A stretch of DNA of 63,977 nucleotides, counting the filler, from Octopus bimaculoides (lineage: Eukaryota): NCBI RefSeq assembly GCF_001194135.2. It is 5 parts of 5 records of this genome, joined end to end, with 100 filler letters (N's around TTAATTAATTAA, not from the genome) between each part and the next. Parts side by side here need not be neighbours in the genome. Positions count along the whole stretch, not along the records: positions 14,937 to 40,649 come from NC_068989.1; 4 more parts are not named here. The stretch is one strand, 5' to 3'. The notes beneath the pieces were generated by a model. It saw only the letters and a list, made by a program, of their open reading frames with translations. It did no database searches and was not told where the DNA came from. The position numbers and the translations under genes are program-made. This document shows, piece by piece, positions 12,876 to 37,519 of this stretch. Every line of letters starts with the position of its first letter. The first letter of the stretch is position 1.

Positions 12876-13365
12876 CTCCAGCTTCGGTGTCTGGATTACA
12901 AATGTACATTCATACCAATAATAATTGGACTACTTGGTTTTGTAAGCAAATGCTTAACTGTCTGGTTGAGATTGTATTTTCAGAAAAAGAAATCAGCCAA
13001 CTGACTTGCACATTACAAATACAATCTGTGAGCGGAACAGTAAAGCTATGCAAGGCTTTTCTCAGGTTTAATATGTGATATTGTTTTCATTCTTTATTTT
13101 CCTTTGTATCTTTGTTAGAAATCAGATCCTTCTTCAAAGGAAGAATTTAAATAATTGTAAACAGAAGAGAAACATACATACACACACGTGCGCACGTGTA
13201 TATACACACATTAAATCATATTCACAAAATTAGCAATTCCCGGAAGTGTCTCGACTGATCAAAATAGCTTTGTTACTTTCTTATCGACCGGTTTGAATCC
13301 TACGAAAAAGAAAACGAACATATATAAGTGCATGCATACATACATACATACACACATACATACAC

Positions 13366-13448
<83 letters not shown>

Positions 13449-13790
13449 ACGGACCACATATTGCTATTTGGGACAGAGGGTCAAAGGTATGTACCATCAT
13501 AGAGATCAGCTGATCTGCAGATATAAATATCTCTTTGAAAATCAAAGAAAAAGAGGGTATCTATGGACAACTGCTTTGAAACATCCAGCTTTTATATCCA
13601 GATTACGAATTCATATTCATACCAATAATAATTGAAGCACTAAGTTTTGTTAGTAAATGCTTAAAGGAGAATCTGGATCAACTAGGATTTTCAGAAAGCG
13701 AAATCGACCGGCTAGTTCGTACATTACAAGTGCAATTTGTGAGTGGAACAGTAAAAATATGCAAGACTTTTCTCAAGTTCCAAATGTGAA
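12876..13790 (+). mobile_element. Two diverged 3'-end fragments of an RLE-type (R4/NeSL-like) non-LTR retrotransposon (12876-13078 and 13586-13790)
   Basis: Both encode a similar C-terminus: FIPIII(G/E)..S/F...LGFSESEI..L..TLQ.Q.VSGTVK(L/I)CK(A/T)FL(R/K)F then stop. The PIIIGA-like motif is typical of the end of RLE domains. Confidence 0.6.
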
Positions 13791-14161
13791 TTTCTCTGTG
13801 TTAACTACATCCCAAAGATGGAGCTTTGTATCTTTGCTGGAAACCGGCTCCGTCCTCAGTGGAAGATTTATAATAATTAAAAAAATAGAAGAGACATACA
13901 TACATACATACATACACACATACATACATACGTACATACGTACGTACATACATACTTACATATAATATCACACACGTCTGAGGAAGTATGTATATGAGTT
14001 TATGTATATGTGCATATATGTGAACCTGCATAAACGTGCGCATGCATACATGTACATATACATACATGCATACAGGGATACGTGCATTCATCGGTACAAA
14101 CATACATGTATACTTAGATATATGAGTGTGTATATGTATTTAACGATAAACTATAAGCAAA

Positions 14162-14218
<57 letters not shown>

Positions 14219-14233
14219 GTCTGTCTATGTATG

Positions 14234-14264
<31 letters not shown>

Positions 14265-14789
14265 CTATCTATCTGTCTATCTGTCAACTATCTATCTGTC
14301 AACTGTCTATCTATAATTTTAAACGCACAAACCTGGATAGATTCTTACATACATGTTCATTCATATACACAGCACACACACACGCACACATACATACACA
14401 CATGTAATTAGGATATAATTACTATTTGCGTGGATTTTGATTTATTTCATCCCACATCAGGGAATAACTGTCGGGTTTCCATCCCTATGGAATATTGCAG
14501 TTATTATGTATCAAATTTATGTTTAAGGATACATTTAAACATTTATATATGATATACATAGCTACATATATACTTTCGTACAAGCACGCAATTCCATTCG
14601 TATATTCATGCAAACACATACACGCACACACATGCGCGCGCTCACACATGCGCGCGCTCACACACATGCGCGCGCGCACACATACACTCACACAGGCGCG
14701 CACCCACGCATGCACGCATGCACACATGCACGCACACACATATCCTATTGTAAACAAATCTAAATGCGTATCAAATAGTAGCATTGTTA

Positions 14790-14820
<31 letters not shown>

Positions 14821-14836
14821 ATATATTATATATATA

Positions 14837-14936
14837 NNNNNNNNNNNNNNNNNNNNNNNNNNNNNNNNNNNNNNNNNNNNTTAATTAATTAANNNNNNNN
14901 NNNNNNNNNNNNNNNNNNNNNNNNNNNNNNNNNNNN
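14837..14936. other. Artificial scaffold join: N44-TTAATTAATTAA-N44
   Basis: Exactly 44 N, a 12-nt palindromic six-frame stop linker, then 44 N. Identical copies at 40650-40749, 45942-46041 and 62667-62766. Confidence 0.97.
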
Positions 14937-14951
14937 TCATTATTATTATTA

Positions 14952-15027
<76 letters not shown>

Positions 15028-15169
15028 GATACCTTTTCTTGGTGTCAGCAAGACGTCGTTTTGAGTCGCCCATAAGTTTGCTCGTCTGTTTCTATGTTCA
15101 AAAAGTTGTTAATGGTTGAAATTTTGTTATATAAGTCTTCAACTAACAATTTCAGAATTCGGTTTTTGA

Positions 15170-15545
15170 CGAATCAGAAAGGCTTTGTACTACACGATTC
15201 GAAGCAGATGGGTGCAGTATCTCGCTCAACAGTTTGGGGTGGTTGGCTGGTTGGAGATGGAATGGACTTTACCGACTACCTCGACAACCTCCCACGGCTC
15301 TCAGCGAGAAATCCAGAATTCTGCGATAGGCTGATAACAGCCGATGAAATTCAGGAAGTGATGGTAGCTGCACAAAAAGTTGCGGAGGGTGGATGGTCTG
15401 TCCTACGAGCTTTATCTTCATATATTACATTTATTCGGAACCCACTCGGCAGATGTCTACTGTGGCAAGCAATAGATTTGGATAATTCCTAATCTTGTGA
15501 AAAGAAGTGTAGTGGGGCTGCTGAGAAAGGACTAGAACAGGGTCC
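15170..15545 (+). mobile_element. L1/Tx1-like LINE ORF2 fragment (pre-RT region), decayed
   Basis: Frameshifted peptide DFTDYLDNLPRLSARNPEFC..ITADEIQEVM...DGLSYELY...LFG...IPNLVKRSVVGLLRKD. Confidence 0.7.
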
Positions 15546-16430
15546 GACATCATGGATTTGTTTCTCCAGGTGTTGAACCTATTTCTGAGTTAATCTTTGC
15601 TTCTTTCAAAGTTTTATATTCCTTCAGAATACTGCCGACTGCCCCTATTTCTGTCGTGAGGGACATCATTCGTTTGACGTTGTCTGCATATATGGATACA
15701 GATTTATAACATTCTTGATCGAACAGGATGCTCCTCAACACTTGAAGCTTCCGCAGTAGTAGCTCGAGTTTCAGGACACGATAAAGATGAGGGAGGACAC
15801 TGTTGAGGGGCCAAGTGCGATTCAAGACACGGTTTCGATAAGTGGCTGTATGTTTTGACGAACCGAACGGATGCCGCTGTGCATGGTAACGATGCAACCA
15901 TAACTATCTACCTTGAAAGCAGCGGTCAAATAGTGATGTTCGATCCTATCAAAAGGTTGGACCCTACCAAAGTCAGCTTTACTACCTATTCTTTCTATGA
16001 TGTATCGCATGTTGTTAGAGGTTGTCGTTGACAGACCTGGTTGGGACAGTGCACATCAGCGCTTTTCTGACCAAACTGTTGACGACAAACGCCAAACGTT
16101 TTACTATCTGCACGGACAAAGTCTTAAACTTTATGTTCAGCAGAATTACGGGCCAGACATTGTTATTTACATATTCTTTTTTCAAGCCCTTCCTCAGAAA
16201 TGATATCACTAAAATATCGTATATGCCCAAAGTTCAAAGGGCATACCACACAAAGCAGGCCACCTGCGCCTCGTATAATCCTTTGCTGCCTGTCATATTT
16301 CAGCCATTGTTATCAACATTTTGCAGCACTACGCATCTTACGCCGAGTGTTGCGCCAGACCATCGAGGCAGACACTAATATCCACTACCCTCTCTGTCGC
16401 CCCTCTCTTCGAATATTTACAGCATAGTGC
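15541..16430 (-). mobile_element. L1/Tx1-like LINE ORF2 fragment (RT domain), decayed
   Basis: WPVILLN.KFK.L...RL..VV..LV.....VPTRSVNDNL, MRYIIERI, PFDRIEH.YL, RGPQQCPPS (QGCPLS-like), SIYADNV (YADD-like) and AKINSE. Confidence 0.8.
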
Positions 16431-16689
16431 CGCTAAAAAGCTTCACACATCTATTTGAAACTGAGTTACACCCGACTGTCCTGTAGGCCAAAGGCTGAAC
16501 TGTGTATTTGTTGACATATCACGTATCTGCTACCTAGGTCCATTGAACGGGTTTACTTCTTCGTATGTCTTTCCAAATCGCTTTTTTCTATTTTGTTTAT
16601 TTAATCGCCATTAATTTAATCGGTTGTTCCAGCCTCCCATAAGCACTAAAGAACTGGTTGTTCCCAAGAACACTTCTAACATCTAAAGA

Positions 16690-17591
16690 AACCCGTGTGC
16701 CCTACCTAACACAGAGTATAGACGTCAACAGTGCTGAAGGCATTCAAAACCCTTAAATCAACTGAGATTAACCAGGCAATAAGAAGACAAACACACCCTT
16801 TCACACAACTCATATGCGACAACATTACTATAAAATCGGGTTGAATCAGAGGACATCCTGATGCCTATATCTATCGTTAGGCTTATTTGATCGAGTGTGT
16901 TGTACAAGATTGAAACAGTTTACAGTGTTACAAGCAGTTGGATTATTATGTCGCGTGTGTCTATGAGTTATCGTTGGTAGTTTATTGTCTTGACCAATTC
17001 TTCCTGGCCTGTATTCTCTATCTGAGTTCTCAAACCGTGATGTTATGATGATGTAAAATGTGTATTACTATTCGAGAAATTACTAGTGTTGTGTATGTCT
17101 GCTTTTTCTATATATTGAATTTTTTCACAGTACCCAGCCTTAGCTAAAGCAGCATTATAATAAGTTGCATGTGATTCGAAAATGTTATTGTTAGCGGATA
17201 ATCTAGAAATTCTTGTAGAAATACTCTTAGCTAATCCCCGTATTACTGAAGAAGGATAGTTGGATGTTACATTTATGTATTTAATATGATCATTTGGCTT
17301 ATGAAATGGTTCAAATAATCTAGTATCAAGACAGAAGGTAGAGTCAAAAAAATTTATTCTACGATAATCCTTTCCCATAGTAATGTTTCGTCCTAGTTAT
17401 TTTTAATCTAAACAAAGTGTTTCTATGCCTTTGTAGTAGTACTTTACTACTTCTGTCCAGACAAAATAAGGCGCCATCCCTATATAGACCCCTGTTACTT
17501 CTGGAAAGAAAGACTGGATTAATGAAAGGATATATATTCCGATTAGGTCTGTTACCTGTGCAGAGTCAGATGACCCCATTGCTATATCAAA
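16690..17591 (-). mobile_element. Penelope-like element RT palm/thumb fragment
   Basis: FDIAMGSSDSAQVTDLIGIYIL, GLYRDG (YRDDG-like), INFFDSTFCL, FEPFHKPN..KYINVTSNYP..I...ISTRISRLS....F......Y..AL...GY, and a downstream degenerate (W)FNP motif near 16840. Confidence 0.8.
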
Positions 17592-18590
17592 NNNNNNNNN
17601 NNNNNNNNNNNNNNNNNNNNNNNNNNNNNNNNNNNNNNNNNNNNNNNNNNNNNNNNNNNNNNNNNNNNNNNNNNNNNNNNNNNNNNNNNNNNNNNNNNNN
17701 NNNNNNNNNNNNNNNNNNNNNNNNNNNNNNNNNNNNNNNNNNNNNNNNNNNNNNNNNNNNNNNNNNNNNNNNNNNNNNNNNNNNNNNNNNNNNNNNNNNN
17801 NNNNNNNNNNNNNNNNNNNNNNNNNNNNNNNNNNNNNNNNNNNNNNNNNNNNNNNNNNNNNNNNNNNNNNNNNNNNNNNNNNNNNNNNNNNNNNNNNNNN
17901 NNNNNNNNNNNNNNNNNNNNNNNNNNNNNNNNNNNNNNNNNNNNNNNNNNNNNNNNNNNNNNNNNNNNNNNNNNNNNNNNNNNNNNNNNNNNNNNNNNNN
18001 NNNNNNNNNNNNNNNNNNNNNNNNNNNNNNNNNNNNNNNNNNNNNNNNNNNNNNNNNNNNNNNNNNNNNNNNNNNNNNNNNNNNNNNNNNNNNNNNNNNN
18101 NNNNNNNNNNNNNNNNNNNNNNNNNNNNNNNNNNNNNNNNNNNNNNNNNNNNNNNNNNNNNNNNNNNNNNNNNNNNNNNNNNNNNNNNNNNNNNNNNNNN
18201 NNNNNNNNNNNNNNNNNNNNNNNNNNNNNNNNNNNNNNNNNNNNNNNNNNNNNNNNNNNNNNNNNNNNNNNNNNNNNNNNNNNNNNNNNNNNNNNNNNNN
18301 NNNNNNNNNNNNNNNNNNNNNNNNNNNNNNNNNNNNNNNNNNNNNNNNNNNNNNNNNNNNNNNNNNNNNNNNNNNNNNNNNNNNNNNNNNNNNNNNNNNN
18401 NNNNNNNNNNNNNNNNNNNNNNNNNNNNNNNNNNNNNNNNNNNNNNNNNNNNNNNNNNNNNNNNNNNNNNNNNNNNNNNNNNNNNNNNNNNNNNNNNNNN
18501 NNNNNNNNNNNNNNNNNNNNNNNNNNNNNNNNNNNNNNNNNNNNNNNNNNNNNNNNNNNNNNNNNNNNNNNNNNNNNNNNNNNNNNNNNN

Positions 18591-18885
18591 CAACGTACAA
18601 TTCTTCACAATTAGGGCATTTGATGCAGTAGATTAGATTTCTACTTTTGCAGTTCATGTTCGCATTGGTGAATATTTTCCCTGTTTTTGTGTTCATATAT
18701 GGGCCGGTATGGATTGATCGGCATGTGCCGCATCGGCTATCATTGCATTTGGATACAGTGAATGTTTGATTTTTGTTGCTGAGGTCAAACCTTGCCTTTG
18801 TTAATAGTTTTTTCAAGTTTTTAGGTTGTCTCTTACTGAGAGTTATATTTTGATCTGTAATGATATTTCTCAATTCCTTACTTTG
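18591..18885 (-). mobile_element. Penelope-like element linker + GIY-YIG endonuclease N-terminal fragment
   Basis: RQPKNLKKLLTKARF..KCNDSRCGTC..I..G...NMNCKSRNLIYCIKCPNCEELYV, truncated by the N gap. Confidence 0.85.
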
Positions 18886-19570
18886 TGCAAAGTAAGGAAT
18901 TGAGAAATATCATTGCGCTGAATTGGCTTTCTATCCCATCGAATGATGCGAGGTAGACTGGATAAGATCGACTATACACCACATTTACCTCTAAATTGTT
19001 AAACCACACAATCAGACAGAGATACGTTCGTTGAGCTGTCATTCTCATTTATAAAATCATAACTTAAACTCGTTTTCCTTTACCACATGCGCAGAATCGG
19101 CTGTGCAGATTAAGACATTCGCTTTGAATCCATAAAGATCATGGTCCAGTGCCGGGCAAGCGTCTCCCATTGTGATTTCAGGTCAAAGATTGCTTTGTGA
19201 TTGAAATTGGTAAGAGGAAACTGTGTGAAAGCACAAGATGTATACTGTATATATGCATGTGTGTATGTGTGTGTGAGTGTGTGTGTGTGTGCGTGCGTGC
19301 GTATGTGAATGCTCCTCCACGATTTCACAACTTGTGTTGATTTGTTTACATACAAATTGGCGACTCGTCAAAAAATAACAATATAACTAGTTACAGACAG
19401 AGAAAACCGTTTAAGGGTGTACGCCAGTGTGACAGAATTGCAATGATTGATGCAAGTAAATGAATTTAAAAACGCTAATGAAATGTCTTTAAAAAAAAGA
19501 TTACAGTCACCGAATTGTAATACACATTTGCTTAAGCAAATTCATTACTAATTACTGAGGGTAAAATATC

Positions 19571-19589
19571 TTCATTTCTTCTATTGCAG
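19571..19589 (+). promoter_or_regulatory. Candidate splice acceptor of a 5'-UTR intron (GPCR copy 1); paralogous site ends at 24291
   Basis: TTCATTTCTTCTATTGCAG|G, conserved in copy 2 as TTTATTTCTTCTATTGCAG|G at the edge of the duplicated unit. Confidence 0.5.
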
Positions 19590-19832
19590 GTACAACTACA
19601 AAAGCTAGTGCATATATACATATACAAAGTCAACATACCGTTGTTCTATGTTCCGAATTTTGGTTACATTCAAATACTTAAAACTGATTTATTATGTCTT
19701 CAATATATTGAAAGCATTTTCAATTTTGACCTATTCATATTACTACATTGCAGTAAAATTCATCAACAAATAGATATCAAATATATCTCTTGAATTTCTT
19801 CAATCTTGCTGCTTCAACATATTCAGTTTCAA

Positions 19833-21764
19833 ATGGAAATTATCTTAAAACATTACTTTTCTATTTTATTTCTTATCCTTATGAATCACGCCATTCTAAC
19901 TTCAAGTTCTACCTTAAAATGTTTCAATACTACGGATTGTGAATTTTGCTCATTTGAAAAACACTGTCATGTATACAAAAGATGCTGTTGTAATGAAGAT
20001 CAACAGAAAACTGTGGAGTCCAAATATTTCGATCCATCAATATATTATAATTGTAGCCTTGTTCAGACAAAAAGATATTATATCTTTGACCGCTGTCCAT
20101 CAAATTACAGTGATATAAGTCATGTGACCAGATGTGAATATCCGAAAAACAATGATAGTCTAGACAATATTCTTGTGTTCGGTGAAACAACTAAAAGACT
20201 CTACAGGAACCGATATTGTGCTTTGTGTCACACGGAGAAATATATATTATGGAATATTGTTTATGACTGCGTTAAAACAGTAAATATAAATCGTGCCAAT
20301 TTAATGAATATGATTGAAAATGGTAAATGTAACAAACGCAAAGCTCCTCCGGATGATTTAAAACCTTATCTGGTTCCTTGCATACCCAGTGTTAATAAAT
20401 GCTCGCCTCATATATTAAATAAAACATTTAAATATCAATGTCCAACTTTCGAAAAGCCACAATGTACATCGTCTAATGATTATACTGATCGAGACATCTT
20501 ATGTTGCAGTGTATCAACCAGTACAGCACCGAGTCAAAAGAGATTTCCATTAACTATAATTTTTAATTATAATATCAAATATTTAATTATTAAAGCTGAA
20601 AAAGACGGTACTGAAACTAATGCGAAATTGCCATTTTGTCCAAAATACACCAATTACGATAAAAACACAATGCGTTGTCGCACGAATTTTTATCACCCTA
20701 TCTTAAATTGTACAGCGACGAGATTAAAGGACTCCGAATATCATATCACTAGTGATGGCCTTCTCTATTTAAATACTACCCAACGTTGGCTCAATCAATC
20801 AGAATTCAGTGTTGATGAAGATGGTTTAAGTATCTGTGTAAAGAATGATAACAATGAAATATCAAAATATTCCGAAATTGAGAGCTATATCACATTAGTG
20901 GGACTAGCAATCTCTGTTCCTGCTCTAGCAGTTACTATTCTAGTTTATCTCTGTATACCTGATCTCCGTACCTTACCAGGTAAATTACTCATTAGTCTTT
21001 CATCAGCACTGTTTGTAGCTGATCTTCTCTTTCTTATCTCAACAAAAGTCACTACATCTACAGTGCTGTGTAAGTCTTTAGCTGTTGTAATGCATTATGC
21101 GTTTTTAGCGACTTTCTTCTGGACGAATGTCATGTCATTTGATGCCTGGCACACTTTCTCAGGGATTACACAACTTCGGAGTTCAGAAAAGGATACCAAA
21201 AGACTTGTATTATATTCCTTATATGCTTGGATCTGTCCACTTGTAATAGTATCAGTGTCACTGATATTTGAGTACACACCTGGAAATCATGGACTTTCTC
21301 CAGAATATGGAATTGGTATTTGCTGGATTACAAACGTGAACAGTTTGCTTTGGTTCTTCGCAATCCCTGTAATCATTATTTTATGTCTGAATATTATAGC
21401 GTATAGCATCACTATTAGAGAGTTGTATTTGGTCAGCAAACTTTCTTCGAAATATTTATCAAAACGAAACAAAAAGGTGTTCCTTATTTACATAAAATTA
21501 AGCTTCATCATGGGTTTAACGTGGATGCTCGGATTCCTTTATACGTTTACGAAGATTGACGAATTTTCTCTACTATTTTGCATCTTAAACTCTTTCGTCG
21601 GTTTACTCATTTCTTTGTCATTTCTCTTAACAAGGATCGTCTGCCGCAGTTTTCTACATATGTTTCTTAAAATACGAAAATTTGTCAATTCCTCAAATGC
21701 TGATGTTTCGACAATTAATGAAACAATGTCGACCTATACCCAACATGATACGTCACTAAAATAA
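19833..21764 (+). CDS. Class B (Methuselah-like / non-GAIN adhesion-like, 7tm_2) GPCR with uninterrupted CDS, copy 1, 643 aa
   Basis: The first in-frame ATG is at 19833 (the track starts at TTG 19806). Signal-peptide-like N-terminus, Cys-rich ectodomain (CS.EKHCHVYKRCCC; LYRNRYCALCH; EYHITSDGLLYL...EFSV...SIC), seven hydrophobic segments with LRTLPGK, C..LAVVMHYAFLATFFW.NVMSFD, YAWICP, GICWI, KLSFIMGLTW and LNSFVG. Confidence 0.93.
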   Translation: MEIILKHYFSILFLILMNHAILTSSSTLKCFNTTDCEFCSFEKHCHVYKRCCCNEDQQKTVESKYFDPSIYYNCSLVQTKRYYIFDRCPSNYSDISHVTRCEYPKNNDSLDNILVFGETTKRLYRNRYCALCHTEKYILWNIVYDCVKTVNINRANLMNMIENGKCNKRKAPPDDLKPYLVPCIPSVNKCSPHILNKTFKYQCPTFEKPQCTSSNDYTDRDILCCSVSTSTAPSQKRFPLTIIFNYNIKYLIIKAEKDGTETNAKLPFCPKYTNYDKNTMRCRTNFYHPILNCTATRLKDSEYHITSDGLLYLNTTQRWLNQSEFSVDEDGLSICVKNDNNEISKYSEIESYITLVGLAISVPALAVTILVYLCIPDLRTLPGKLLISLSSALFVADLLFLISTKVTTSTVLCKSLAVVMHYAFLATFFWTNVMSFDAWHTFSGITQLRSSEKDTKRLVLYSLYAWICPLVIVSVSLIFEYTPGNHGLSPEYGIGICWITNVNSLLWFFAIPVIIILCLNIIAYSITIRELYLVSKLSSKYLSKRNKKVFLIYIKLSFIMGLTWMLGFLYTFTKIDEFSLLFCILNSFVGLLISLSFLLTRIVCRSFLHMFLKIRKFVNSSNADVSTINETMSTYTQHDTSLK

Positions 21765-22981
21765 TAGAAATTTTTCCAGAAATATTCTAGACAACAGATA
21801 TTCTACCACAGTACACAACCTTTAGTAACGCTGCGTTCTATAAACTACACTGTAAGGCCTGTAACGTCACAACACTTGCTGCATTTTGTATCAGACTACT
21901 TTACATTTATGATAATGATATAAACGTTAAGAATTATAATAAAATGCAGACTGTGAGGGCGTCACTGATATCCTTCAACGGGCTTTCATATTAAGAACTG
22001 AAACACAGTTCCATCAATCTCAGCTTCTTATCTACTCCAGGGGACATTTTGTGGTTTTATTTATTGTCAACAAGCTTTTAACCGACTTCAGTATTTTGAG
22101 TTTCTTTTAAAGGCTAATAAATGTTTCAATAATTGGATAACACTGAATTCCTATAACATTTCAAATGCTTTTCGAATTCCGAATATATGCGTCTTTGATC
22201 ACTCTCCATAGATCTCGATTGGAAAAGAATTCACTTATTTGCCTAAATTTGGTCTGTCTTCATGAAACCATTCTCTTCACATCACATACTTATAGTAGAA
22301 TCCAATGAGATTGGAGGTGGTCTGATTCGCCAAGATTTTTGTTATGTAGAAAATATTGACAGAGCGAGCACAGTAAACTTGCCGTACCTAATGAAATATC
22401 CAACATTTTTCCAAGAGTCTTTCTCGAGGTAAATTTATGAAGAAGGAAATAAAAGAAAGCAAGAGATGTTTCTCTATGTCTGAGAGGGTCTCTATGTCTT
22501 TGTTCCGGTATCAGTTGTTTCAATTGCTCTTGTGTTATATATTCAACTACGATGTTTTCCAACTACATATTTACAAAACACATTTCAACATTCACATTAA
22601 CTATTTGTTCTCTCTAAAATATTTCGTGTATACGCGGTAAGCAATACATTTTCATTTCTATCATAAACACCGTAGAAAACAAATTTGGCTCACATGGAAA
22701 TTTTATGCTTCCAAATTTTCTAGTGTTGCAGATTATAGCCTTCCAAATATGACCCTCAAGATCGTGTTATTTGTAATATATAGAGAAACAGCATGTATAT
22801 GACACGACTGCTCACATCTCATCTTATATTCCATAACTGATTATATTTATTGAAATGATATATGATGTATTATTCATATTAAATTACTTCTTTCAATACA
22901 CGACTTGATACAATAAAAGTCCAGTAATATTTTGTGTACTGGTGACATTGCAAAATGCGTCACATTACCAATCAGATTATA

Positions 22982-23881
22982 CTGGGTAATCCCATAAATA
23001 ATGCGAATTATTCGTAGGTGAACAGGATGAACTACCTGCATCAACTTGCTATAAAACCAAGTAGTAATTTTACTTTGTCCTTATTCTCAGTGCATGTTTT
23101 GAAGAGTGCAGTTCGATTTTAACAGTTATTTCTTCGAAGCTATAATGGAAGTGACAAAGGAGCATATTCGGCATATTTTGCTTTATGAGTTCAATAAAGG
23201 CAACAACGCAACGGTAAGTGCGAGGAATATTAATGCAGTATTTGGGGATCAGACAATAAGAATAAACCTTGTCAACAGTGGTTCCAGAAATTCCGAGCCG
23301 GAAACTACAGACTAGAAGACGAGCCTTGTCCTAGAACATCTGTAGAGCTCGACGACGGAGTTCTGCAAACCTGGTGGAACAAAATCCCATCGTAACTGTT
23401 GAAAAACTAGCAGAGAAGCTTGGATTTGGTCATTTAACCAGTCATTCAAATCAGTGCTAGAAGAAAAATGACCATCTTTGGTTTCAAGATGGAAGGTGCT
23501 CTTCTATCAGGATAATGCTCGGCCACATACAGCGAGAACGAAATTCCACAGGCTGGAACAGTTTGAATGAGAAACGATGCCCCACCCACTATATTCACTG
23601 GACATTGCCCCCATCTGATTATCATTTATTTCACACTCTTCAAAATCAATTGGACTGAAAAATATGAATTCTGTAGACGAGGTCAGGAAAGTACATGAGT
23701 ATTTTTCGGCATACACAAGTAAATTTTGGAAGAGGGGTCTTGCAAATTGACAAGATGGTTGAAATACCATTGTAGAAAATGAAAGAGAGTATATTTTAGA
23801 TTGAAAAAGAACTTTGTTTATCTTAATTCTGAAAAATAAAAGAAATATTTTAAAAATCGTATTATTTATGGGATGACCAGA
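22982..23881 (+). mobile_element. Internally deleted mariner (900 bp) between the two GPCR copies
   Basis: TIRs CTGGGTAATCCCATAAATAATGCG and revcomp TCTGGTCATCCCATAAATAATACG, flanked by TA. Transposase N-terminus MEVTKEHIRHILLYEFNKG is joined directly to C-terminal QDNARPH and YS(P)DIAPSDYHLF pieces. Confidence 0.9.
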
Positions 23882-24504
23882 TATTACGTCAATACAAACA
23901 TATAATGTCCTGTTATAAAAAGATTTCCTAAATTACGCCATATGGGAGTGTGGAGTGGCTGCAGGTGTCTGTGTTTGTATGTGTCCCAACTCAGTTTCAC
24001 ATTTGCTGTTAGTTTGTTTTCGTCTTCGCAACTTAGAGTTTCATTAGTAAGATGCCGATAGGAAAAGTACCAAATATAGAAACATTACTGTGTTCGATTT
24101 GTTCCATTAAAACCTTCACTGCCGTGTCCCAATAAAGTTGCACTCCGATGGCTAAAACAAGTAAAAATATGACAAAATAATACGAGTTCAAAATATAAAG
24201 AAATAATATTATCAAATTGTTATAAGCAATTCCTTGCATCGTTTGATTATTGAATATTATTAGTAAAATATCTTTATTTCTTCTATTGCAGGTATAACTA
24301 CGAAAACTATATAACACAAAACAACTTACTCTTAAGCTATAGCTCATTCTTGTTTGCTTATATTCAAAAACATAAATACATTGGAGGCATTTTCAATTTT
24401 GACCTATTCATATTACGCCATTCTAGTAAAATTCATCAACGAATTGATATCAGTATATATCCTGGATTTCTTCAAGTTTGTTGCTTCAACATTTTCAGTT
24501 CCGA

Positions 24505-26463
24505 ATGGAAATCGTCTTAAAATATTACTTTTCTATTTTATTTCTTATCACTATATTTATGAATAACATCATTCTAACATCAAATTCCCTACTAAACTGC
24601 TTACGTACGACGGACTGTGAATTTTGCTCTCTTGGACAACACTGTCATATGTATGATAGATGCTGCTGTAATGAAAATCAACAGAAAACTGATGAGTCCA
24701 AATATTTCGATCCATCAATATATTATAGTTGCAGCCTTGTTCAGAACGAAGCATATTATATCTTTGATCGCTGTCCATCAAATCACAGTGATACAAGTCA
24801 TATAACCGGATGTGAATATCTTAAAAACAACGATAGCCCGGACAATACTCCTGTGTTCGGTGAAACAACTAAAAGACTTTATAGGAACCGACATTGCGGT
24901 CTGTGCCACTCGGAAAAATATATATTATGGGAGACAGTTTATGACTGCAAAAATACAGTAAATATAAACCCTGCCAATATAATGAATATGATTGAAAATG
25001 GTAAATGTGACAAACGGTACGCTCCTCCTGATAATTTAAAGCCGTATCTGGTTCCTTGCATTCCAAGTGTTCCTAAATGCTCGCCTCATATATTAAATGA
25101 AACATTAGAACATCACTGTCTAAATTTAGCAAGTAAGAACCATAGAGGAAAGGACCAATGTATATTAGCTAATAGCTATACTAATGAAGGCATTATATGT
25201 TGCAATAATACTGACAACAAAAAATTTGATTTTTCAAGTTTGCCTTCCTTAACTATCATTTTTTATTATAATGCCAAATATTTAATCATTAAAGAACTGA
25301 AAGGCGGTACTGTAATTGAAAAGAAATTGCCATTTTGTCCAAAATACACCAATTACGATAAAAACACAATGCGTTGTCGCGCGGATTTTTATCACCCTAT
25401 CTTAAATTGTACAGCGACGAGATTAAAGGACTCCGAATATCATATCACTGGTGATGGTCTTCTCTATTTAAATACTACCCAACGTTGGCTCAATCAATCA
25501 GAATTCAGTATTGATGAAGATGGTTTAAGTATCTGTGTAAAGAATGATAACAATGAAATATCAAAATATTCCGAAATTGAGAGCTATATCACATTAGTGG
25601 GACTAGCAATCTCTGTTCCTGCTCTAGCAGTTACTATTCTAGTTTATCTCTGTATACCTGATCTCCGTACCTTACCAGGTAAATTACTCATTAGTCTTTC
25701 ATCAGCACTGTTTGTCGCTGATCTTCTCTTACTTATCTCACCACAATTCACTACATCTACAGTGCTGTGTAAGTCTTTAGCTGTTGCAATGCATTATTCC
25801 TTTCTAGCGACTTTCTTTTGGATGAACGTCATGTCATTTGATGCCTGGCACACTTTCTCAAGACTTACACAACTCCGGAGTTCAGAAAAGGATACTAAAA
25901 GACTTGTATTATATTCCTTATATGCTTGGATCTGTCCACTTGTAATAGTATCAGTGTCACTGATATTTGAGTACACACCTGGAAATCATGGACTTTCTCC
26001 AGAATATGGAATTGGTATTTGCTGGATTACAAACGTGAACAGTTTGCTTTGGTTCTTGGCAATCCCTGTTATCATTATATTATGCCTCAATATTATAGCG
26101 TATAGCATCACTATTAGAGAATTATATTTGGCCTACAAACTTTCTTCAAAATATTTATCAAAGCAAAACAAAAAGGTGTTCTTTATTTACATAAAATTAT
26201 GCTTCATCATGGGTTTAACATGGATGTTCGCATTCCTTTATACGTTTACGAAGATTGACGAATTTTCTCTACTATTTTGCATTTTAAACTCTTTCGTCGG
26301 TTTATTCATTTCTTTGTCGTTTCTCTTAACAAGGATCGTCTGCCGCAGTTTTCTACGTATGTTTCTTAAAATGCGAAAATATGTCGAATCCTCAAACGCT
26401 GATGTTTCGACGATTACTGAAACAAACTCGACCAATATTCAAAATGAAACGTCACTAAAATAA
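24505..26463 (+). CDS. Class B (Methuselah-like / non-GAIN adhesion-like) GPCR with uninterrupted CDS, copy 2, 652 aa
   Basis: The first in-frame ATG is at 24505. Same architecture as copy 1 with an intact reading frame and a near-identical juxtamembrane/7TM core. Confidence 0.93.
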   Translation: MEIVLKYYFSILFLITIFMNNIILTSNSLLNCLRTTDCEFCSLGQHCHMYDRCCCNENQQKTDESKYFDPSIYYSCSLVQNEAYYIFDRCPSNHSDTSHITGCEYLKNNDSPDNTPVFGETTKRLYRNRHCGLCHSEKYILWETVYDCKNTVNINPANIMNMIENGKCDKRYAPPDNLKPYLVPCIPSVPKCSPHILNETLEHHCLNLASKNHRGKDQCILANSYTNEGIICCNNTDNKKFDFSSLPSLTIIFYYNAKYLIIKELKGGTVIEKKLPFCPKYTNYDKNTMRCRADFYHPILNCTATRLKDSEYHITGDGLLYLNTTQRWLNQSEFSIDEDGLSICVKNDNNEISKYSEIESYITLVGLAISVPALAVTILVYLCIPDLRTLPGKLLISLSSALFVADLLLLISPQFTTSTVLCKSLAVAMHYSFLATFFWMNVMSFDAWHTFSRLTQLRSSEKDTKRLVLYSLYAWICPLVIVSVSLIFEYTPGNHGLSPEYGIGICWITNVNSLLWFLAIPVIIILCLNIIAYSITIRELYLAYKLSSKYLSKQNKKVFFIYIKLCFIMGLTWMFAFLYTFTKIDEFSLLFCILNSFVGLFISLSFLLTRIVCRSFLRMFLKMRKYVESSNADVSTITETNSTNIQNETSLK

Positions 26464-27956
26464 TTGAAACTTCTCCAGAAATATTCTAGACAACAGACAT
26501 TCTACCACAGTACACAACCTATTGTAATGCTACATTCTATAAACTACACTGTAAAAGTCTCTAACACCACTTACTGCATTCTATCTCAGACTAATTTATG
26601 TTTATGATAACCTTATAAGCGTTAAGTATTATAATTAGAATGCAGATTTTGATGACGTTCTTGATATCCTTCAACGAGCTTTCGTATTAGAAACTGAAAC
26701 AGAGTTTCCTCTCACTACACACTTTCACCAATCTCAGATTGTCACCCTCTCCAGCAAGCTTTTTCAGAATGTATCTATTGCCAACGATTTTTAAATCGAC
26801 TTCAGTACTTTTGTTTTCTCATGGGGATTAATAACATTTCAACAATTAGATAATGTTGAATATCTATAAGTTTTCAAATATTTTTCATATTCTGGATAAA
26901 TACATCTTCGATCACTTTCATCATAGATCTCGTTCAGAAAAATTCACCTACGTGGCTGACATGTACATTCTCAAGCATTCGCTTGTTGGCTTGAAACCAT
27001 TCTTTTCACATCACATGTAATATTTATATCAGAATCCAATGAGACTAAATGTCGTCTGCATCGTTAAGAATTTTTGTTATCTCGGAAATATGACAGAACA
27101 AGTACAGTGAACTTGCCGTACATAATGGAATGTCCAATATTCTTGTATGAGTCCTCAAGGTAAATTTGAACTGAAATGAAATAAAAGACAGCAGAACTTT
27201 ACATTCTCCGGAGTCAACTGTCTCGTTGTTATCAAACTACAATGTTTGCAGGACAAATTTCGAATATGCTGTGAACATTACATGTAATAAATATAGCAAA
27301 ATCTAAGGAGGGCGATGATAATGTGTATTGACAAGATTTTTCTTGTTTGGAATATGAGAATGAGAATGGTAAAATAGCCGTTGCGTGATGAATATCCAAC
27401 TTTTCTGTAAACATTCTGCTTAAAATAAATTTGACAGGAGGAAAGTAAAAGAAAAACAATAGGGTTTTACATCATCTATTTTAAGAAACTGGTTTCATTT
27501 GGGGACGAACTAACTTAAAATATCTTCTATCTTGTATTGACCCATGATTTTTCAAACTATAACTAAACTAAATCTATTTCAAACGTTCCCATTGTGCATC
27601 TGTTACGTTTAGATGCGTGATAAATTGCGTGATGGGAATTTGTACAATTCATGACTGCTTCTATATCGTGAGATATCATATTCCATTCGTTAATTACTAC
27701 TACTCTAAATAATTATATGTATTATGCCTCAATATCATGCGTGTCTCTTTTGCATGACTACATACTTTTCTTTCCTTCCAACATCAAAGAACTTTGCACC
27801 TTACTTGACATTTTATATTACACTACTATTTCTAATTCTTCAGTGCCTACATTGAATGATTAAATTCCATAGCAGACTGTATGATATAAATATTATATTT
27901 TATGGAACTATACTTCATGCAATTAGTTACACTACATTATTATTATTAACGCACAT

Positions 27957-35599: not shown

Positions 35600-37519
35600 T
35601 TATTGGATATTTCTTTCAGATGCTGATGGTGATGTACGGTATAAAGTAGACATTTTCGAGAAATTCCCAAACTGCAGGCATTTTCTAGCTATTACTCTTG
35701 TGGAAAGAAAAGAAAAACAAACAAACAATCCCAAAAATGAATTACCGATACAGAAAAGGAGAGAAAATTCACTGATTTTTGTGAATGTATATAGGAATCC
35801 CAAAATCCATGTTAAACCCATAACAAGACTGAGCTTGAAGAAAATTTTGAAGTTAATATTATGGTAACTTAATAAATATTTTGAAGAACGCTTCATTTCT
35901 AAACGGAGGCCTCTTGAAATAAAAATAAAAGCTAAAACATTAAGTGTTAACAGTATAATAACTGGAATTCCAAACACCCATAAAAGACATTTTCCATTTG
36001 TAATCCAACATATACCCTTGCCATATGCTGGGGAAACTGCTTTGTTTTCTGGTATATACTCAAGTAGGAGTGACATCGTTACAATTATAAGTGGACTGAG
36101 CCATGCATATATAGAATACAGTAAAAGTTTTTTATTACCCTGATTAGAAATATGAAATTGCATCAATCCTGAGAAAGTGCGGCAGGCATCAAACGATACG
36201 ACATTCATCCAGAAGAACGATGCCAAGAAAGAATAATGCATCAAAACAGCTGTCAAAATACATTGAATAGTATACGGAGGCACATATCTAGAAATAAGAA
36301 ACAAAACCTCTGCCAAAAACAGCGATGACAGAAGATTGATTACGAATTTGCCTGGTAAAGTACGTAGTTCAGGTATACAGAGATAAGTTACAATTGTTAT
36401 TAGTAGAGCAGGAACAGAAATAGTAAGACCTATAAATGTAATATAACTCTCAGATGTAGCATATTTTGATATTGCACCGAAGTCCTTATCTATGCAGATA
36501 CTTATGCCTTGAGTATCCTGACTGAATTCTGATCTGTTCAGTAGTCGTTGAGTTTTATTCAAATAAAGCAGACCGTCATCAGTGAGGTAATATTCATCAT
36601 CATTTAGTCTCACTGCAATACAATTGATGAGTGAATGGAAGAAAACTGAACGACACTGGTTTTGATAAACATCAAATAATAAATCACTGTTACAGAGAAT
36701 TGCTTCATGCCTTCCTGCGCTTCTATTCGTGTCGCCACTCTCTTGAATAGCATTTATGTACTGCAATATATTACTGCTGTGGTCGAATATTATAGTCAAT
36801 GGATAGGTTCTTCCAAACTCTTTGCGATCTGCACCAAAATATGTAGAGTTTAAGTCATTACATAAAGCACAGTTTTGGTACTTATTTGAAGAAGCCGGTG
36901 ACTTGGAATTTGTTTCACATAACTCCGATCTATTTTCATGTTGCTCTTTTATAGAACAATTCGAAATATCGTATAAGCATTCATATAGATTATTAATAAA
37001 TGTAATATCTGGGACATCAAATGAATAAAAGTTACATGTGCCATTTGAAAGGTGCCTTGAAAGTTGCTGATATGTAATATTACTCATATTGCATTCATAA
37101 ATCGATTTTCCCAAAATGTATTCTTGATCGTTGCACAAAGCACAGAATACATTCTTGTACAATTTTTTGTCTACTTTCCCGAAAGCTGGTACTTTCAAGA
37201 TATAATCTCCATCAACAGAATTCTCACATTTTCTCACATATTCTTTAATAGGGTAACTAGGAAGGCATTTGTCAAGGGCAATGTAATATCCAATTTTCAG
37301 TTTCGTACAACTTTGTGCAGAAATATTTTGATTATGAGAAACATTACGATTAGGCAGGTCTACACAGCAATTCTTAAATAAGTGACATTCAGGTTGACAA
37401 GAACATTTGTGATATAGCTCCCATTCCGAGCAAGAAACTGATGTTGCATCATAATACTTACTTTGCAAACATAAATTAGCATTTATAAAAAAGTAGAAGA
37501 TAAATGAAACCCACTTCAT
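35600..37519 (-). CDS. Class B (Methuselah-like / SMB-motif) GPCR with uninterrupted CDS, copy 3, 639 aa, diverged paralog
   Basis: ATG in AAACAATG context and a signal-peptide-like MKWVSFIFYFFINA. Motifs: CSCQPECHLFKNCCVD (SMB-like), LYKNVFCALCN, EYYLTDDGLLYL...EFS...ISIC, LRTLPGK, HYSFLASFFWMNVVSFD, YAWLSP, GICWI, KLSLVMGLTW and GNSFLG. Confidence 0.93.
   Translation of the reverse strand: MKWVSFIFYFFINANLCLQSKYYDATSVSCSEWELYHKCSCQPECHLFKNCCVDLPNRNVSHNQNISAQSCTKLKIGYYIALDKCLPSYPIKEYVRKCENSVDGDYILKVPAFGKVDKKLYKNVFCALCNDQEYILGKSIYECNMSNITYQQLSRHLSNGTCNFYSFDVPDITFINNLYECLYDISNCSIKEQHENRSELCETNSKSPASSNKYQNCALCNDLNSTYFGADRKEFGRTYPLTIIFDHSSNILQYINAIQESGDTNRSAGRHEAILCNSDLLFDVYQNQCRSVFFHSLINCIAVRLNDDEYYLTDDGLLYLNKTQRLLNRSEFSQDTQGISICIDKDFGAISKYATSESYITFIGLTISVPALLITIVTYLCIPELRTLPGKFVINLLSSLFLAEVLFLISRYVPPYTIQCILTAVLMHYSFLASFFWMNVVSFDACRTFSGLMQFHISNQGNKKLLLYSIYAWLSPLIIVTMSLLLEYIPENKAVSPAYGKGICWITNGKCLLWVFGIPVIILLTLNVLAFIFISRGLRLEMKRSSKYLLSYHNINFKIFFKLSLVMGLTWILGFLYTFTKISEFSLLFCIGNSFLGLFVCFSFLSTRVIARKCLQFGNFSKMSTLYRTSPSASERNIQ

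What the first reader, a model, noticed from the sequence alone, without database searches (positions are those of the whole stretch)
20812..21358. Gene-conversion mosaic: two identical tracts flank an island of amino-acid change at TM2-ECL1-TM3
Copies 1 and 2 are identical over 205 bp (20812-21016 = 25511-25715) and 161 bp (21198-21358 = 25897-26057), including synonymous sites, although their ectodomains and 3' flanks carry many substitutions and indels. The ~60 codons between the tracts have 9 amino-acid differences (FLISTKVT/LLISPQFT, V/A, A/S, T/M, GI/RL). This fits recent conversion that spared, or was selected against at, a likely ligand-facing segment.
Basis: partly seen in the sequence, partly recalled or inferred. 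Interest (0 to 1): 0.7.

Follow-up and report, generated by a model that had tools for sequence, protein, structure and literature searches.

The report
Gene conversion between tandem octopus receptor genes
Two neighbouring octopus receptor genes that duplicated long ago have recently copied parts of their membrane-spanning halves onto each other, leaving a short older stretch in between; this is a clear but ordinary case of concerted evolution, with no sign that selection protects that stretch.

Summary
Window 20812-21016 equals 25511-25715 (205 bp) and 21198-21358 equals 25897-26057 (161 bp). The 181 bp between them carry 17 nucleotide and 9 amino-acid differences.

The genes are two intronless tandem Methuselah-like class-B GPCRs (7tm_2 plus DUF8401 ectodomain), c1 at 19833-21764 and c2 at 24505-26463. 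They belong to a published octopus-specific expansion.

O. sinensis and O. vulgaris carry orthologues of both copies, so the duplication predates the species split. Paralogue dS is 0.40 and orthologue dS is 0.15. In the flanks, the ectodomain and 21359-21470, c1 groups with orthologue A and c2 with orthologue C (100% bootstrap). In 20624-21016 and 21198-21358, c1 groups with c2 (100%), with dS of 0-0.03 and shared derived bases. Orthologue dS in those same tracts is 0.09-0.19, so constraint does not explain the identity. This is interlocus gene conversion.

The island holds older divergence (dS 0.22, dN/dS 0.31, 8 synonymous and 9 non-synonymous changes). It shows no excess of amino-acid change, and only 2 of its 17 differing sites follow the orthologue pattern. 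Two of the nine changes lie in intracellular loop 2. "Spared" is supported; "selected against" and "ligand-facing" are not. Exact identity still needs long-read confirmation.

The parts
19833..21764 (+). Copy 1 (c1): intronless Methuselah-like class-B GPCR gene, 643 aa from the first ATG (the open frame starts at 19806). It is the orthologue of copy A in O. sinensis and O. vulgaris.
   Evidence: ORF found. Pfam 7tm_2 E=2.5e-28. 91-92% nucleotide identity and conserved gene order with L001 6457-9638 and L002 9440-12204. c1 groups with A at 100% bootstrap in the flanks and ectodomain.
24505..26463 (+). Copy 2 (c2): tandem paralogue, 652 aa from the first ATG (the open frame starts at 24478). It is the orthologue of copy C in O. 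sinensis and O. vulgaris.
   Evidence: ORF found. Pfam 7tm_2 E=7e-28. 89-90% identity with L001 15172-21656. c2 groups with C at 100% bootstrap in the variable ectodomain part, TM5-ICL3 and the 3' flank.
20624..20811 (+). Left part of the converted block (= 25323-25510). It encodes the last beta-strands of the ectodomain, before the stalk and TM1. It has 5 differences, all singletons, 4 of them non-synonymous.
   Evidence: Identity runs of 58, 65 and 51 bp. dS 0.028 against orthologue dS of 0.19-0.30. c1+c2 cluster at 100% bootstrap.
20812..21016 (+). Identical tract 1 (= 25511-25715), 205 bp. It encodes the last ectodomain strand, the stalk, TM1, ICL1 and most of TM2.
   Evidence: 0 mismatches. 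Run-length P<2e-4. c1+c2 cluster at 100% bootstrap. Four bases derived in the window species are shared by both copies: 20931, 20933, 20940, 20945. Orthologue dS here is 0.13-0.18.
21017..21197 (+). Island (= 25716-25896), 181 bp. It encodes the end of TM2, ECL1, TM3 and the start of ICL2. It has 17 nucleotide and 9 amino-acid differences and represents older, only partly homogenised divergence.
   Evidence: dS 0.216, dN 0.067, omega 0.31. Site table. c2 keeps family-ancestral states (21099T, 21101C, 21105C, 21124T, 21164A) that are also found in distant paralogues. Two or three shared derived sites lie among the differences (21023, 21074, 21191). Helix boundaries come from the AF2 model.
21198..21358 (+). 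Identical tract 2 (= 25897-26057), 161 bp. It encodes TM4, ECL2 and the start of TM5.
   Evidence: 0 mismatches. P<2e-4 for the second-longest run. c1+c2 cluster at 100% bootstrap. Orthologue dS here is 0.09-0.19.
21359..21470 (+). Unconverted old segment (= 26058-26169). It encodes the rest of TM5, ICL3 and the start of TM6. The difference between paralogues is kept in both species lineages.
   Evidence: c1-c2 dS is 0.41 and A-C dS is 0.62. Seven sites follow the pattern c1=A, c2=C. The split {A,B,c1}|{c2,C} has 100% bootstrap.
21471..21673 (+). Intermediate segment (= 26170-26372). It encodes TM6, TM7 and helix 8. Divergence is about 4% and the phylogenetic signal is ambiguous.
   Evidence: dS 0.10, similar to the orthologue level. 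No split is well supported. It lies inside the low-divergence block.
35600..37519 (-). Copy 3 (c3): a more distant family member (639 aa, about 68% nucleotide identity in the 7TM region). It was used as an outgroup and takes no part in the conversion.
   Evidence: ORF. Pfam 7tm_2. 68% identity. Its O. sinensis orthologue is P0022, 90% amino-acid identity.

Best explanation
c1 and c2 are an old tandem pair of intronless octopus-specific Methuselah-like GPCR genes. After the window species separated from the O. sinensis/O. vulgaris lineage, non-allelic (interlocus) gene conversion copied sequence between them within the half that encodes the end of the ectodomain, the stalk and the 7TM domain.

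The most recent transfers cover about 20624-21016 and 21198-21358. The 181-bp island between them was not included in those transfers and keeps older divergence, both synonymous and non-synonymous. The N-terminal ectodomain, TM5-ICL3 (21359-21470) and the flanks have not been converted since before the species split.

Shown here: the identity, the dS mosaic, the conflict between orthology and paralogy along the gene, and the shared derived bases.

Inferred: the mechanism, which is heteroduplex formation and repair between misaligned tandem copies. The gap could result from two separate short tracts, or from one long heteroduplex repaired in patches. The diverged island may itself act as a barrier, because mismatches stop heteroduplex extension. 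The direction of transfer could not be determined.
For: 1. The tracts are exactly identical and the run lengths exceed chance, including at third codon positions.

2. Both copies have orthologues in O. sinensis (L001) and O. vulgaris (L002) with conserved gene order. c1 matches A at 91-92% and c2 matches C at 89-90%.

3. Overall orthologue dS is 0.153 (c1-A) and 0.145 (c2-C). Paralogue dS is 0.40 in the ectodomain and 0.41 in TM5-ICL3, but 0.028 in the stalk segment and 0 in both tracts, with a 95% upper bound of 0.035.

4. Segment trees: c1+A and c2+C have 100% bootstrap in the 5' flank, ectodomain, TM5-ICL3 and 3' flank. c1+c2 has 100% in the stalk segment, tract 1 and tract 2.

5. After polarising with distant paralogues, both copies share bases derived in the window species, namely 20735, 20931, 20933, 20940, 20945 and 21252. 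At about ten amino-acid positions both window copies carry one residue and all six sinensis/vulgaris copies carry another.

6. Orthologues differ at synonymous sites inside the tracts (dS 0.09-0.19), so constraint on the nucleotide sequence does not explain the identity.

7. Two independent assemblies with no N in the fetched loci show the same process. Os_B and Os_C are 99-100% identical over the 5' half. A, B and C are 93-99% identical in the stalk and TM1-4 region. Os_A and Ov_A differ in the stalk segment (dS 0.12, against about 0.01 elsewhere), which points to an event after those two species split.

8. The island has 8 synonymous and 9 non-synonymous changes. c2 retains states also seen in distant paralogues P0004 and P0006, which fits retained old sequence rather than new mutation.
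Against: - The window assembly has N gaps and no reads are available. Exact identity of short paralogous tracts could be sharpened by consensus mixing or by a repeat contig being placed twice.
- The fine mosaic inside 20624-21673 does not survive a strict BIC penalty.
- The island is not a clean unconverted block. c1 and c2 still group together there (83% bootstrap), only 2 of the 17 differing sites follow the orthologue pattern, and 2-3 shared derived sites lie among the differences. Its history therefore includes earlier or patchy conversion and cannot be resolved from two sequences.
- c2 is unusually far from its orthologue at synonymous sites in the island (12/42 vs 41/361, P=0.006). This needs an extra assumption: either conversion of Os_C by A or B in the other lineage, or an unsampled donor.
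Confidence: 0.8

Rival explanations
1. Assembly artefact. The two tracts are identical only because a short-read or scaffolded assembly collapsed near-identical paralogous sequence, placed one repeat contig twice, or polished both copies with mixed reads.
For: The piece contains N gaps at 17592-18590, 30839-31164 and 34698-34707. Loci from O. bimaculoides, the likely source species, are also gap-rich. Tracts of 161-205 bp are about the size that k-mer assemblers cannot tell apart.
Against: An artefact could erase a few true differences, but it cannot create the wider signal. Both copies share derived bases and residues across about 700 bp. Both keep copy-specific, orthologue-matching states on either side of and between the tracts, for example 21124, 21176, and seven sites in 21359-21470. 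The same concerted pattern appears in the fetched O. sinensis and O. vulgaris loci, which contain no N.
Confidence: 0.08
2. One long recent c1-c2 conversion covered 20624-21358. Afterwards the island, mainly in c2, was overwritten by a short ectopic conversion from a third, more distant family member.
For: c2 carries a cluster of changes (21099T, 21101C, 21105C, plus 21124T and 21164A) identical to paralogues P0004 and P0006. c2's L and P at the TM2/ECL1 border occur in P0014. c1's T-K motif (21042A, 21045A) occurs in another paralogue at the end of L004 and in protein P0008. c2 has excess synonymous distance from its orthologue in the island (P=0.006).
Against: No sampled paralogue matches c2's island better than c1 does (87.8% or less, against 90.6%). 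Run-length tests of c1 and c2 against P0004, P0006 and P0014 show nothing (P>0.1). Six c2 states occur in no sequence examined. The shared states are family-ancestral, so c2 may simply have retained them while Os_C was converted by A or B.
Confidence: 0.1
3. Selection against conversion, as at L/M opsin exon 5. The island is kept different because its amino-acid differences give c1 and c2 distinct ligand or signalling properties, so convertants that erase them are removed.
For: There is a divergence peak flanked by zero divergence. Four replacements lie at the extracellular end of TM2 and in ECL1. The pattern is known from other duplicates undergoing conversion (PMC3924837).
Against: dN/dS is 0.31 and the N:S ratio matches other segments. 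The paralogue-specific states are not conserved across species: only 2 of the 17 differing sites follow the orthologue pattern, and c1+c2 still group at 83%. The replacements fall at positions that vary across the family, and two are in ICL2. The O. sinensis paralogues show no clear peak here. The segment that does meet the cross-species criterion is 21359-21470, where most differences are synonymous.
Confidence: 0.12
4. Constraint on the nucleotide sequence keeps the tracts identical without any exchange. Candidates are an RNA structure needed for A-to-I editing, an overlapping element, or codon bias.
For: Cephalopod coding sequences are known to carry editing-related constraint at synonymous sites (general knowledge, not tested here).
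Against: Orthologues differ freely at synonymous sites in the same tracts (dS 0.13-0.18 in tract 1 and 0.09-0.19 in tract 2), while the paralogues within the species are identical. The two copies also share derived bases.
Confidence: 0.01
5. Unequal crossing-over or a recent partial duplication, not conversion, produced the young segments.
For: Copy number differs between species: two copies here, against three plus a relic fragment in O. sinensis and O. vulgaris. Unequal exchange therefore does occur in this cluster.
Against: The young segments are internal patches bounded on both sides by sequence that keeps orthology, namely the ectodomain and 5' flank on the left and TM5-ICL3 and the 3' flank on the right. 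A single crossover would give identity running to the end of the unit and chimeric flanks. c1 is A-like and c2 is C-like at both ends.
Confidence: 0.03

Closest known systems
Interlocus gene conversion with a divergence peak in tandem GPCR duplicates: primate L/M (red/green) opsins (Teshima & Innan 2008; review PMC3924837)
   Same: Both involve tandem GPCR paralogues older than the species compared. Paralogues are more alike than orthologues over most of the unit. A short coding segment keeps its divergence between homogenised flanks.
   Different: In the opsins, the peak carries paralogue-specific tuning residues that are conserved across species and functionally proven. Here the island's differences are mostly lineage-specific singletons, omega is 0.31, and no function is known.
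Mosaic concerted evolution of receptor pairs: EMR2/CD97/EMR3 (adhesion GPCRs), CCR2/CCR5, TLR1/TLR6 (PMC2720389, PMC2077338)
   Same: Conversion is confined to part of a receptor gene, so one module is homogenised while another diverges. EMR2/CD97 belong to the same 7tm_2 superfamily.
   Different: In EMR2/CD97 the ligand-binding EGF ectodomain is the homogenised part. Here the ectodomain diverges and the stalk and 7TM half is homogenised. The genes here have no introns, so tract limits are not set by exon structure.
Octopus-specific Methuselah-like GPCR expansion ('group 4', Ritschard et al. 2019, PMC6408891)
   Same: Same gene family: secretin-type 7TM, tandem clusters, specific to octopuses, reported to be under purifying selection.
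   Different: That study mentions gene conversion only in passing and did not analyse it. The conversion mosaic and the copy-number difference between species in this sub-cluster are described here for the first time, as far as the searched literature shows.
Clustered protocadherin gene conversion (Noonan et al. 2004, cited in PMC3924837)
   Same: Tandem arrays of single-exon receptor ectodomain/TM units, in which conversion homogenises some segments while specificity-bearing ectodomain segments stay diverse.
   Different: A different protein family and a different region. This comparison rests on the citation and on general knowledge; it was not tested here.

Membership tests
Interlocus (non-allelic) gene conversion / concerted evolution | Paralogues within a species are more similar than orthologues between species in a segment, while neighbouring segments keep orthology | tested here: met
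   In 20624-21016 and 21198-21358, c1-c2 identity is 97-100%, against 91-96% for c1-A and c2-C, and c1+c2 has 100% bootstrap. In the flanks, ectodomain and TM5-ICL3, c1+A and c2+C have 100% bootstrap.
Interlocus (non-allelic) gene conversion / concerted evolution | Identity includes synonymous sites, and run lengths exceed a permutation null (GENECONV/Sawyer criterion) | tested here: met
   dS is 0 in both tracts against 0.40 in unconverted parts. Permutation P<2e-4 for all sites and for condensed polymorphic sites; P<=4e-4 for third positions.
Interlocus (non-allelic) gene conversion / concerted evolution | Both paralogues share substitutions derived after the duplication and after speciation | tested here: met
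   Eight polarised sites in 20700-21358 are derived in the window species and present in both copies. Five sites are derived in O. sinensis and shared by A and C.
Interlocus (non-allelic) gene conversion / concerted evolution | The sequence is real in the organism (reads or an independent assembly of the same species) | not testable with these tools
   No reads and no second assembly of the window species are available.
Divergence peak maintained by selection against conversion (Teshima-Innan model) | A peak of divergence flanked by homogenised sequence | tested here: met
   17/181 differences against 0/366 in the tracts, P=4e-9. Synonymous 8/43 against 1/122, P=9e-5.
Divergence peak maintained by selection against conversion (Teshima-Innan model) | Within the peak, sequences cluster by orthology and paralogue-specific states are conserved across species | tested here: not met
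   In the island, c1+c2 has 83% bootstrap and only 2 of the 17 differing sites follow c1=A, c2=C. The criterion is met instead by 21359-21470 (7 sites, 100% bootstrap).
Divergence peak maintained by selection against conversion (Teshima-Innan model) | An excess of amino-acid change, or known functional sites, in the peak | tested here: not met
   omega is 0.31. N:S is 9:8 against 52:32 in the ectodomain (P=0.59). No functional data exist.
Methuselah-like / secretin-type (class B) GPCR, octopus expansion | 7tm_2 seven-helix domain with the TM3-ECL2 cysteine pair | tested here: met
   PF00002 E=2.5e-28. Seven helices plus helix 8 in the AF2 model. C413 and C497 are invariant in the family alignment. 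Foldseek TM-score 0.72-0.85 against adhesion-GPCR 7TM structures.
Methuselah-like / secretin-type (class B) GPCR, octopus expansion | Family-specific ectodomain (DUF8401, PF28443), as in the other octopus members | tested here: met
   Precomputed PF28443 hits on c2 (P0001) and on all full-length octopus homologues. The local Pfam copy lacks this model.
Methuselah-like / secretin-type (class B) GPCR, octopus expansion | Drosophila-type Methuselah N-terminal ectodomain (PF06652) | tested here: not met
   No hit even at E<=10. PF06652 appears only on the distant crustacean hits. 'Mth-like' is therefore a name taken from 7TM similarity and automated annotation.
Adhesion GPCR | GAIN domain with a GPS autoproteolysis motif before TM1 | tested here: not met
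   No GPS or GAIN Pfam hit at E<=10. No HL/T-type motif is visible in ...SICVKNDNNEISKYSEIESYITL... before TM1. The 7TM is nevertheless closest to adhesion-GPCR structures.

The most novel reading that the evidence does not exclude
The conversion-resistant segments are not accidents of tract placement. They mark the residues that give each paralogue of this orphan, octopus-specific receptor family its own ligand or G-protein specificity. The candidates are TM5-ICL3, which stays paralogue-specific in both species lineages, and possibly the TM2-ECL1-TM3 island in this species. On this reading, concerted evolution of the shared signalling core, together with protected specificity patches and a freely diverging ectodomain, provides a natural chimera map for de-orphanising the family.
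Probability: 0.12. Interest if true: 0.55.

Novelty: new member of a known kind. Interest (0 to 1): 0.35.

Why it matters
Trees and dN/dS tests on the octopus Methuselah-like GPCR expansion assume that each gene has a single history. This cluster shows that the ectodomain and the 7TM halves of the same gene have different histories. Recent-looking, species-specific "duplications" in the 7TM region are partly conversion, and the true duplication here is about 2.7 times older in dS than the species split. Published timing and selection estimates for the family (PMC6408891) would be biased unless the genes are partitioned.

There is also a practical consequence. The near-identical tracts already confuse gene models: the O. 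vulgaris model P0003 fuses two copies. They also make this region a risk for short-read assemblies. As biology, it is a clean textbook-type example rather than a new mechanism.

Tried and rejected
- Positive selection in the island: rejected. omega is 0.31, with 8 synonymous and 9 non-synonymous changes.
- Nucleotide-level constraint: rejected, because orthologue dS in the tracts is 0.09-0.19.
- Ectopic donor for the island. I fetched three O. bimaculoides paralogue loci (L003, L004, L005) and ran run-length tests. No donor was found and all P>0.1. It is kept as a minor rival explanation.
- Direction of conversion, from A-type vs C-type states in the tracts: the states are mixed, so it is undetermined.
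- Penalised change-point segmentation recovered only the coarse block 20624-21673. The fine mosaic needs the permutation, likelihood-ratio and phylogenetic evidence.
- Identifying the source contig: look-up of the window's own protein P0001 and of P0008 returned nothing. That the species is O. bimaculoides is an inference. Every named full-length octopus homologue comes from three species, and two of those (O. sinensis, O. vulgaris) carry their own ~90% orthologues of the window genes.
- Mapping the nine residues onto a binding pocket: only helix boundaries could be read from the AF2 output. Model coordinates are not exposed, so pocket-facing orientation was not tested.
- Pfam scan of eight small flanking ORFs: no hits.
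Full report
**What is in the window.** The piece 14937-40649 carries three intact, intronless open reading frames of about 640-660 codons.
- c1 lies at 19806-21764 on the + strand, with its first ATG at 19833.
- c2 lies at 24478-26463 on the + strand, with its first ATG at 24505.
- c3 lies at 35600-37519 on the - strand.

Each matches only Pfam 7tm_2, the secretin-type seven-helix receptor domain, with E-values from 1e-25 to 1e-28. The closest database proteins all come from Octopus species and are annotated "G-protein coupled receptor Mth-like". They carry 7tm_2 together with DUF8401 (PF28443). By sequence and by predicted fold, the 7TM domain is closest to solved adhesion-GPCR 7TM structures (ADGRD1 E=6e-18; Foldseek TM-score 0.72-0.85). 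No GPS/GAIN domain and no Drosophila Methuselah ectodomain was detected. This family is the octopus-specific, tandemly clustered "group 4" Methuselah-like expansion described by Ritschard et al. 2019. That paper reports purifying selection and mentions gene conversion only in passing (PMC6408891).

**Checking the observation.**
- c1 and c2 lie in a tandem duplicated unit, 19561-22461 vs 24263-27193, that is 82.8% identical overall and has indels.
- Both claimed tracts are exact: 205 bp (20812-21016 = 25511-25715) and 161 bp (21198-21358 = 25897-26057).
- Placing the observed differences at random never produced runs this long in 5,000 trials. This held for the whole unit, the CDS, the conserved 3' half alone, and condensed polymorphic sites in the GENECONV style. 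For third codon positions P was <2e-4 and 4e-4.
- The contrast between island and tracts is 17/181 vs 0/366 (P=4e-9).

There are two refinements. First, the low-divergence block is wider than reported. 20624-21016 has only 5 differences in 393 bp, and a penalised segmentation gives one 4.2% block at 20624-21673 between flanks of 16-36% and 22%. Second, the fine mosaic inside that block passes the permutation tests and a likelihood-ratio test (2dlnL=44.8 for five segments) but not a strict BIC penalty.

**Orthologues settle the mechanism.** Loci were fetched from O. sinensis (L001) and O. vulgaris (L002). Each holds three intact tandem copies, A, B and C.
- c1 is the orthologue of A: 91-92% identity, with conserved gene order from 18914 to 22084.
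- c2 is the orthologue of C: 89-90% identity, with conserved gene order from 23881 to 30494.
- The duplication therefore predates the species split. Overall orthologue dS is 0.153 (c1-A) and 0.145 (c2-C). Paralogue dS is 0.40 in the ectodomain and 0.41 in 21359-21470.

Along the gene, c1-c2 dS runs as follows:

| Segment | c1-c2 dS |
|---|---|
| Ectodomain, N-terminal part | 0.40 |
| Ectodomain, variable part | 0.40 |
| Stalk segment, 20624-20811 | 0.028 |
| Tract 1 | 0 |
| Island | 0.216 |
| Tract 2 | 0 |
| TM5-ICL3, 21359-21470 | 0.41 |
| TM6 to C-terminus | 0.10 |

Neighbour-joining trees built per segment agree with this. c1+A and c2+C have 100% bootstrap in the 5' flank, ectodomain, TM5-ICL3 and 3' flank. 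c1+c2 has 100% bootstrap in the stalk segment, tract 1 and tract 2.

Polarising with more distant paralogues shows bases that are derived in the window species and present in both copies: 20735, 20931, 20933, 20940, 20945 and 21252. At about ten amino-acid positions, both window copies carry one residue while all six sinensis/vulgaris copies carry another.

Orthologues differ at synonymous sites inside the tracts (dS 0.09-0.19). Sequence constraint, including any RNA-editing-related constraint, therefore does not explain the identity. Because the young segments are internal patches bounded on both sides by orthology-preserving sequence, conversion fits better than a single unequal crossover.

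**The process recurs in this cluster.** In O. sinensis and O. vulgaris, B and C are 99-100% identical over the 5' half, and A, B and C are 93-99% identical across the stalk and TM1-4 region. Os_A and Ov_A differ in the stalk segment (dS 0.12, against about 0.01 elsewhere), which implies an event after those two very close species separated. The fetched parts of these two assemblies contain no N. This makes a purely artefactual origin of the pattern in the window unlikely.

**What the island is.** An AlphaFold2 model of c1 (mean pLDDT 68.5, 7TM region mostly 75-93) gives the following helix boundaries in ATG numbering:

| Element | Residues |
|---|---|
| TM1 | 347-374 |
| TM2 | 381-403 |
| ECL1 | 404-409 |
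| TM3 | 410-443 |
| ICL2 | 444-452 |
| TM4 | 453-481 |
| ECL2 | 482-501 |
| TM5 | 502-537 |

The nine replacements map as follows:
- F400L lies at the extracellular end of TM2.
- T404P, K405Q and V406F lie in ECL1.
- V419A, A423S and T431M lie in TM3.
- G444R and I445L lie in ICL2.

So the island runs from TM2 through ECL1 and TM3 into a cytoplasmic loop.

The island holds 8 synonymous and 9 non-synonymous changes (dS 0.216, dN 0.067, omega 0.31). Its N:S ratio does not differ from the ectodomain or from the rest of the 7TM region (P=0.59 and 0.77). It is therefore an island of older divergence, not of amino-acid change.

Site by site:
- Five c2 states (21099T, 21101C, 21105C, 21124T, 21164A) match the distant paralogues P0004 and P0006, so they look ancestral and retained.
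- Two sites (21124, 21176) follow the orthologue pattern c1=A, c2=C.
- Three sites are unique to c1 and six are unique to c2.
- Two or three shared derived sites (21023, 21074, 21191) lie among the differences, and c1+c2 still group at 83% bootstrap.

The simplest reading is that the island was homogenised earlier or in patches and was then left out of the latest transfers. In the other lineage, Os_C was partly converted towards A or B. That would also explain why c2 is unusually far from Os_C at synonymous sites here (12/42 vs 41/361, P=0.006).

I tested whether an ectopic donor had overwritten the island. No sampled paralogue matches c2's island better than c1 does (87.8% or less, against 90.6%), and run-length tests against P0004, P0006 and P0014 were not significant. 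The matches of c1's T-K motif and c2's L...P motif to other family members remain an unresolved lead.

**A better candidate for a protected segment.** 21359-21470 encodes the rest of TM5, ICL3 and the start of TM6. It keeps the A-type vs C-type difference in both lineages: seven orthologue-pattern sites, 100% bootstrap, and dS of 0.41 in the window species and 0.62 in O. sinensis. At the protein level the difference is small (LYL[V/F]S vs LYLA[Y/C]) and most of the differences are synonymous. A mechanical barrier, where divergence blocks heteroduplex extension, explains this as well as selection does.

Gene conversion is supported, and the island was indeed spared by the latest events. Selection against conversion and a ligand-facing role are not supported by any test I could run. 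The pattern is of a known kind. L/M opsins, EMR2/CD97, CCR2/CCR5, TLR1/TLR6 and clustered protocadherins all show mosaic conversion with divergence peaks (PMC3924837, PMC2720389). What is new is the instance. In this octopus-specific receptor family the stalk and 7TM half evolves in concert while the ectodomain diverges, so family trees, duplication dates and dN/dS estimates need partitioning.

**Remaining uncertainty.** The window assembly has N gaps and no reads are available, so the exact zero-difference state of the tracts needs long-read confirmation. The number of events, their direction and their order cannot be resolved from two sequences. That the window comes from O. bimaculoides is an inference, not a result.

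Noticed in passing
L001 9639-14641 (O. sinensis) and L002 about 12205-17245 (O. vulgaris), compared with window 22085-24195: O. sinensis and O. vulgaris carry a third intact tandem copy, B, between the orthologues of c1 and c2. The window species has none, and there is no N gap in that interval. B's variable ectodomain part is old (dS 0.45-0.66 against A and C), so B was probably lost in the window lineage or is missing from its assembly.
   Followed up: partly
L001 9817 to about 10700 vs 15671 to about 16550; the same region in L002: The 5' flank and N-terminal ectodomain of copies B and C are 99-100% identical in O. sinensis and O. vulgaris (dS 0.06 against about 0.30 for A-C). This is an independent conversion or partial re-duplication, and it affects the ectodomain half, the opposite module to the one homogenised in the window.
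   Followed up: partly
L001 14403-14641 and L002 17007-17245: A relic gene fragment lies between B and C. About 142 bp are homologous to c1 21009-21150, which is the TM2-TM3 island region (87% identity). This is followed by about 100 bp of 3'-flank-like sequence. The window has no counterpart.
   Followed up: no
L002 10001-18213 (protein P0003, O. vulgaris): The annotated 573-aa O. vulgaris gene model is a chimera. Residues 1-479 follow copy A up to ECL2. The model then jumps back to ectodomain sequence, probably in the next copy, which repeats the segment matching c1 residues 295-383. Separately, copy A is an intact 654-codon ORF in the O. sinensis locus (L001 7354-9318) but no gene is called there.
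   Followed up: partly
window 33335-33405 vs 35748-35818: A 71-bp fragment is 98.6% identical to the TM7-coding end of c3 and lies about 2.3 kb downstream of that gene. Beside it (33250-33333) is a copy of a repeat also found at 39563-39646 (90% identity, inverted). It is probably a small recent fragment duplication.
   Followed up: no
window 17587-18873 (- strand), next to the 999-N gap at 17592-18590: An open frame is interrupted by the gap. Its readable part (…CNDSRCGTCRS…NLIYCIKCPNCEELYV) resembles, from memory, the Cys-rich lead-in and GIY-YIG start of a Penelope-like retroelement endonuclease. Pfam gave no hit on the 94 readable residues.
   Followed up: partly
window 27942-28435, 28607-28811 and 32091-32654: A family of about 200-bp repeats, 70-83% identical, lies downstream of c2. 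Some copies are direct and some inverted. Related copies occur in the O. sinensis locus and near another family member in O. bimaculoides (L003 13038-13504).
   Followed up: no
window 20931-20945 (= 25630-25644): Four substitutions within 15 bp (20931, 20933, 20940, 20945) are derived in the window species and present in both copies. Such a tight cluster suggests one multi-base event or a micro-conversion from an unsampled paralogue that later spread between c1 and c2.
   Followed up: no
window 20682-20811 (= 25381-25510): Of the five differences that have arisen inside the otherwise homogenised stalk segment, four are non-synonymous (T/A, N/D, S/G, V/I in the last ectodomain strands). The number is too small to test.
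   Followed up: no
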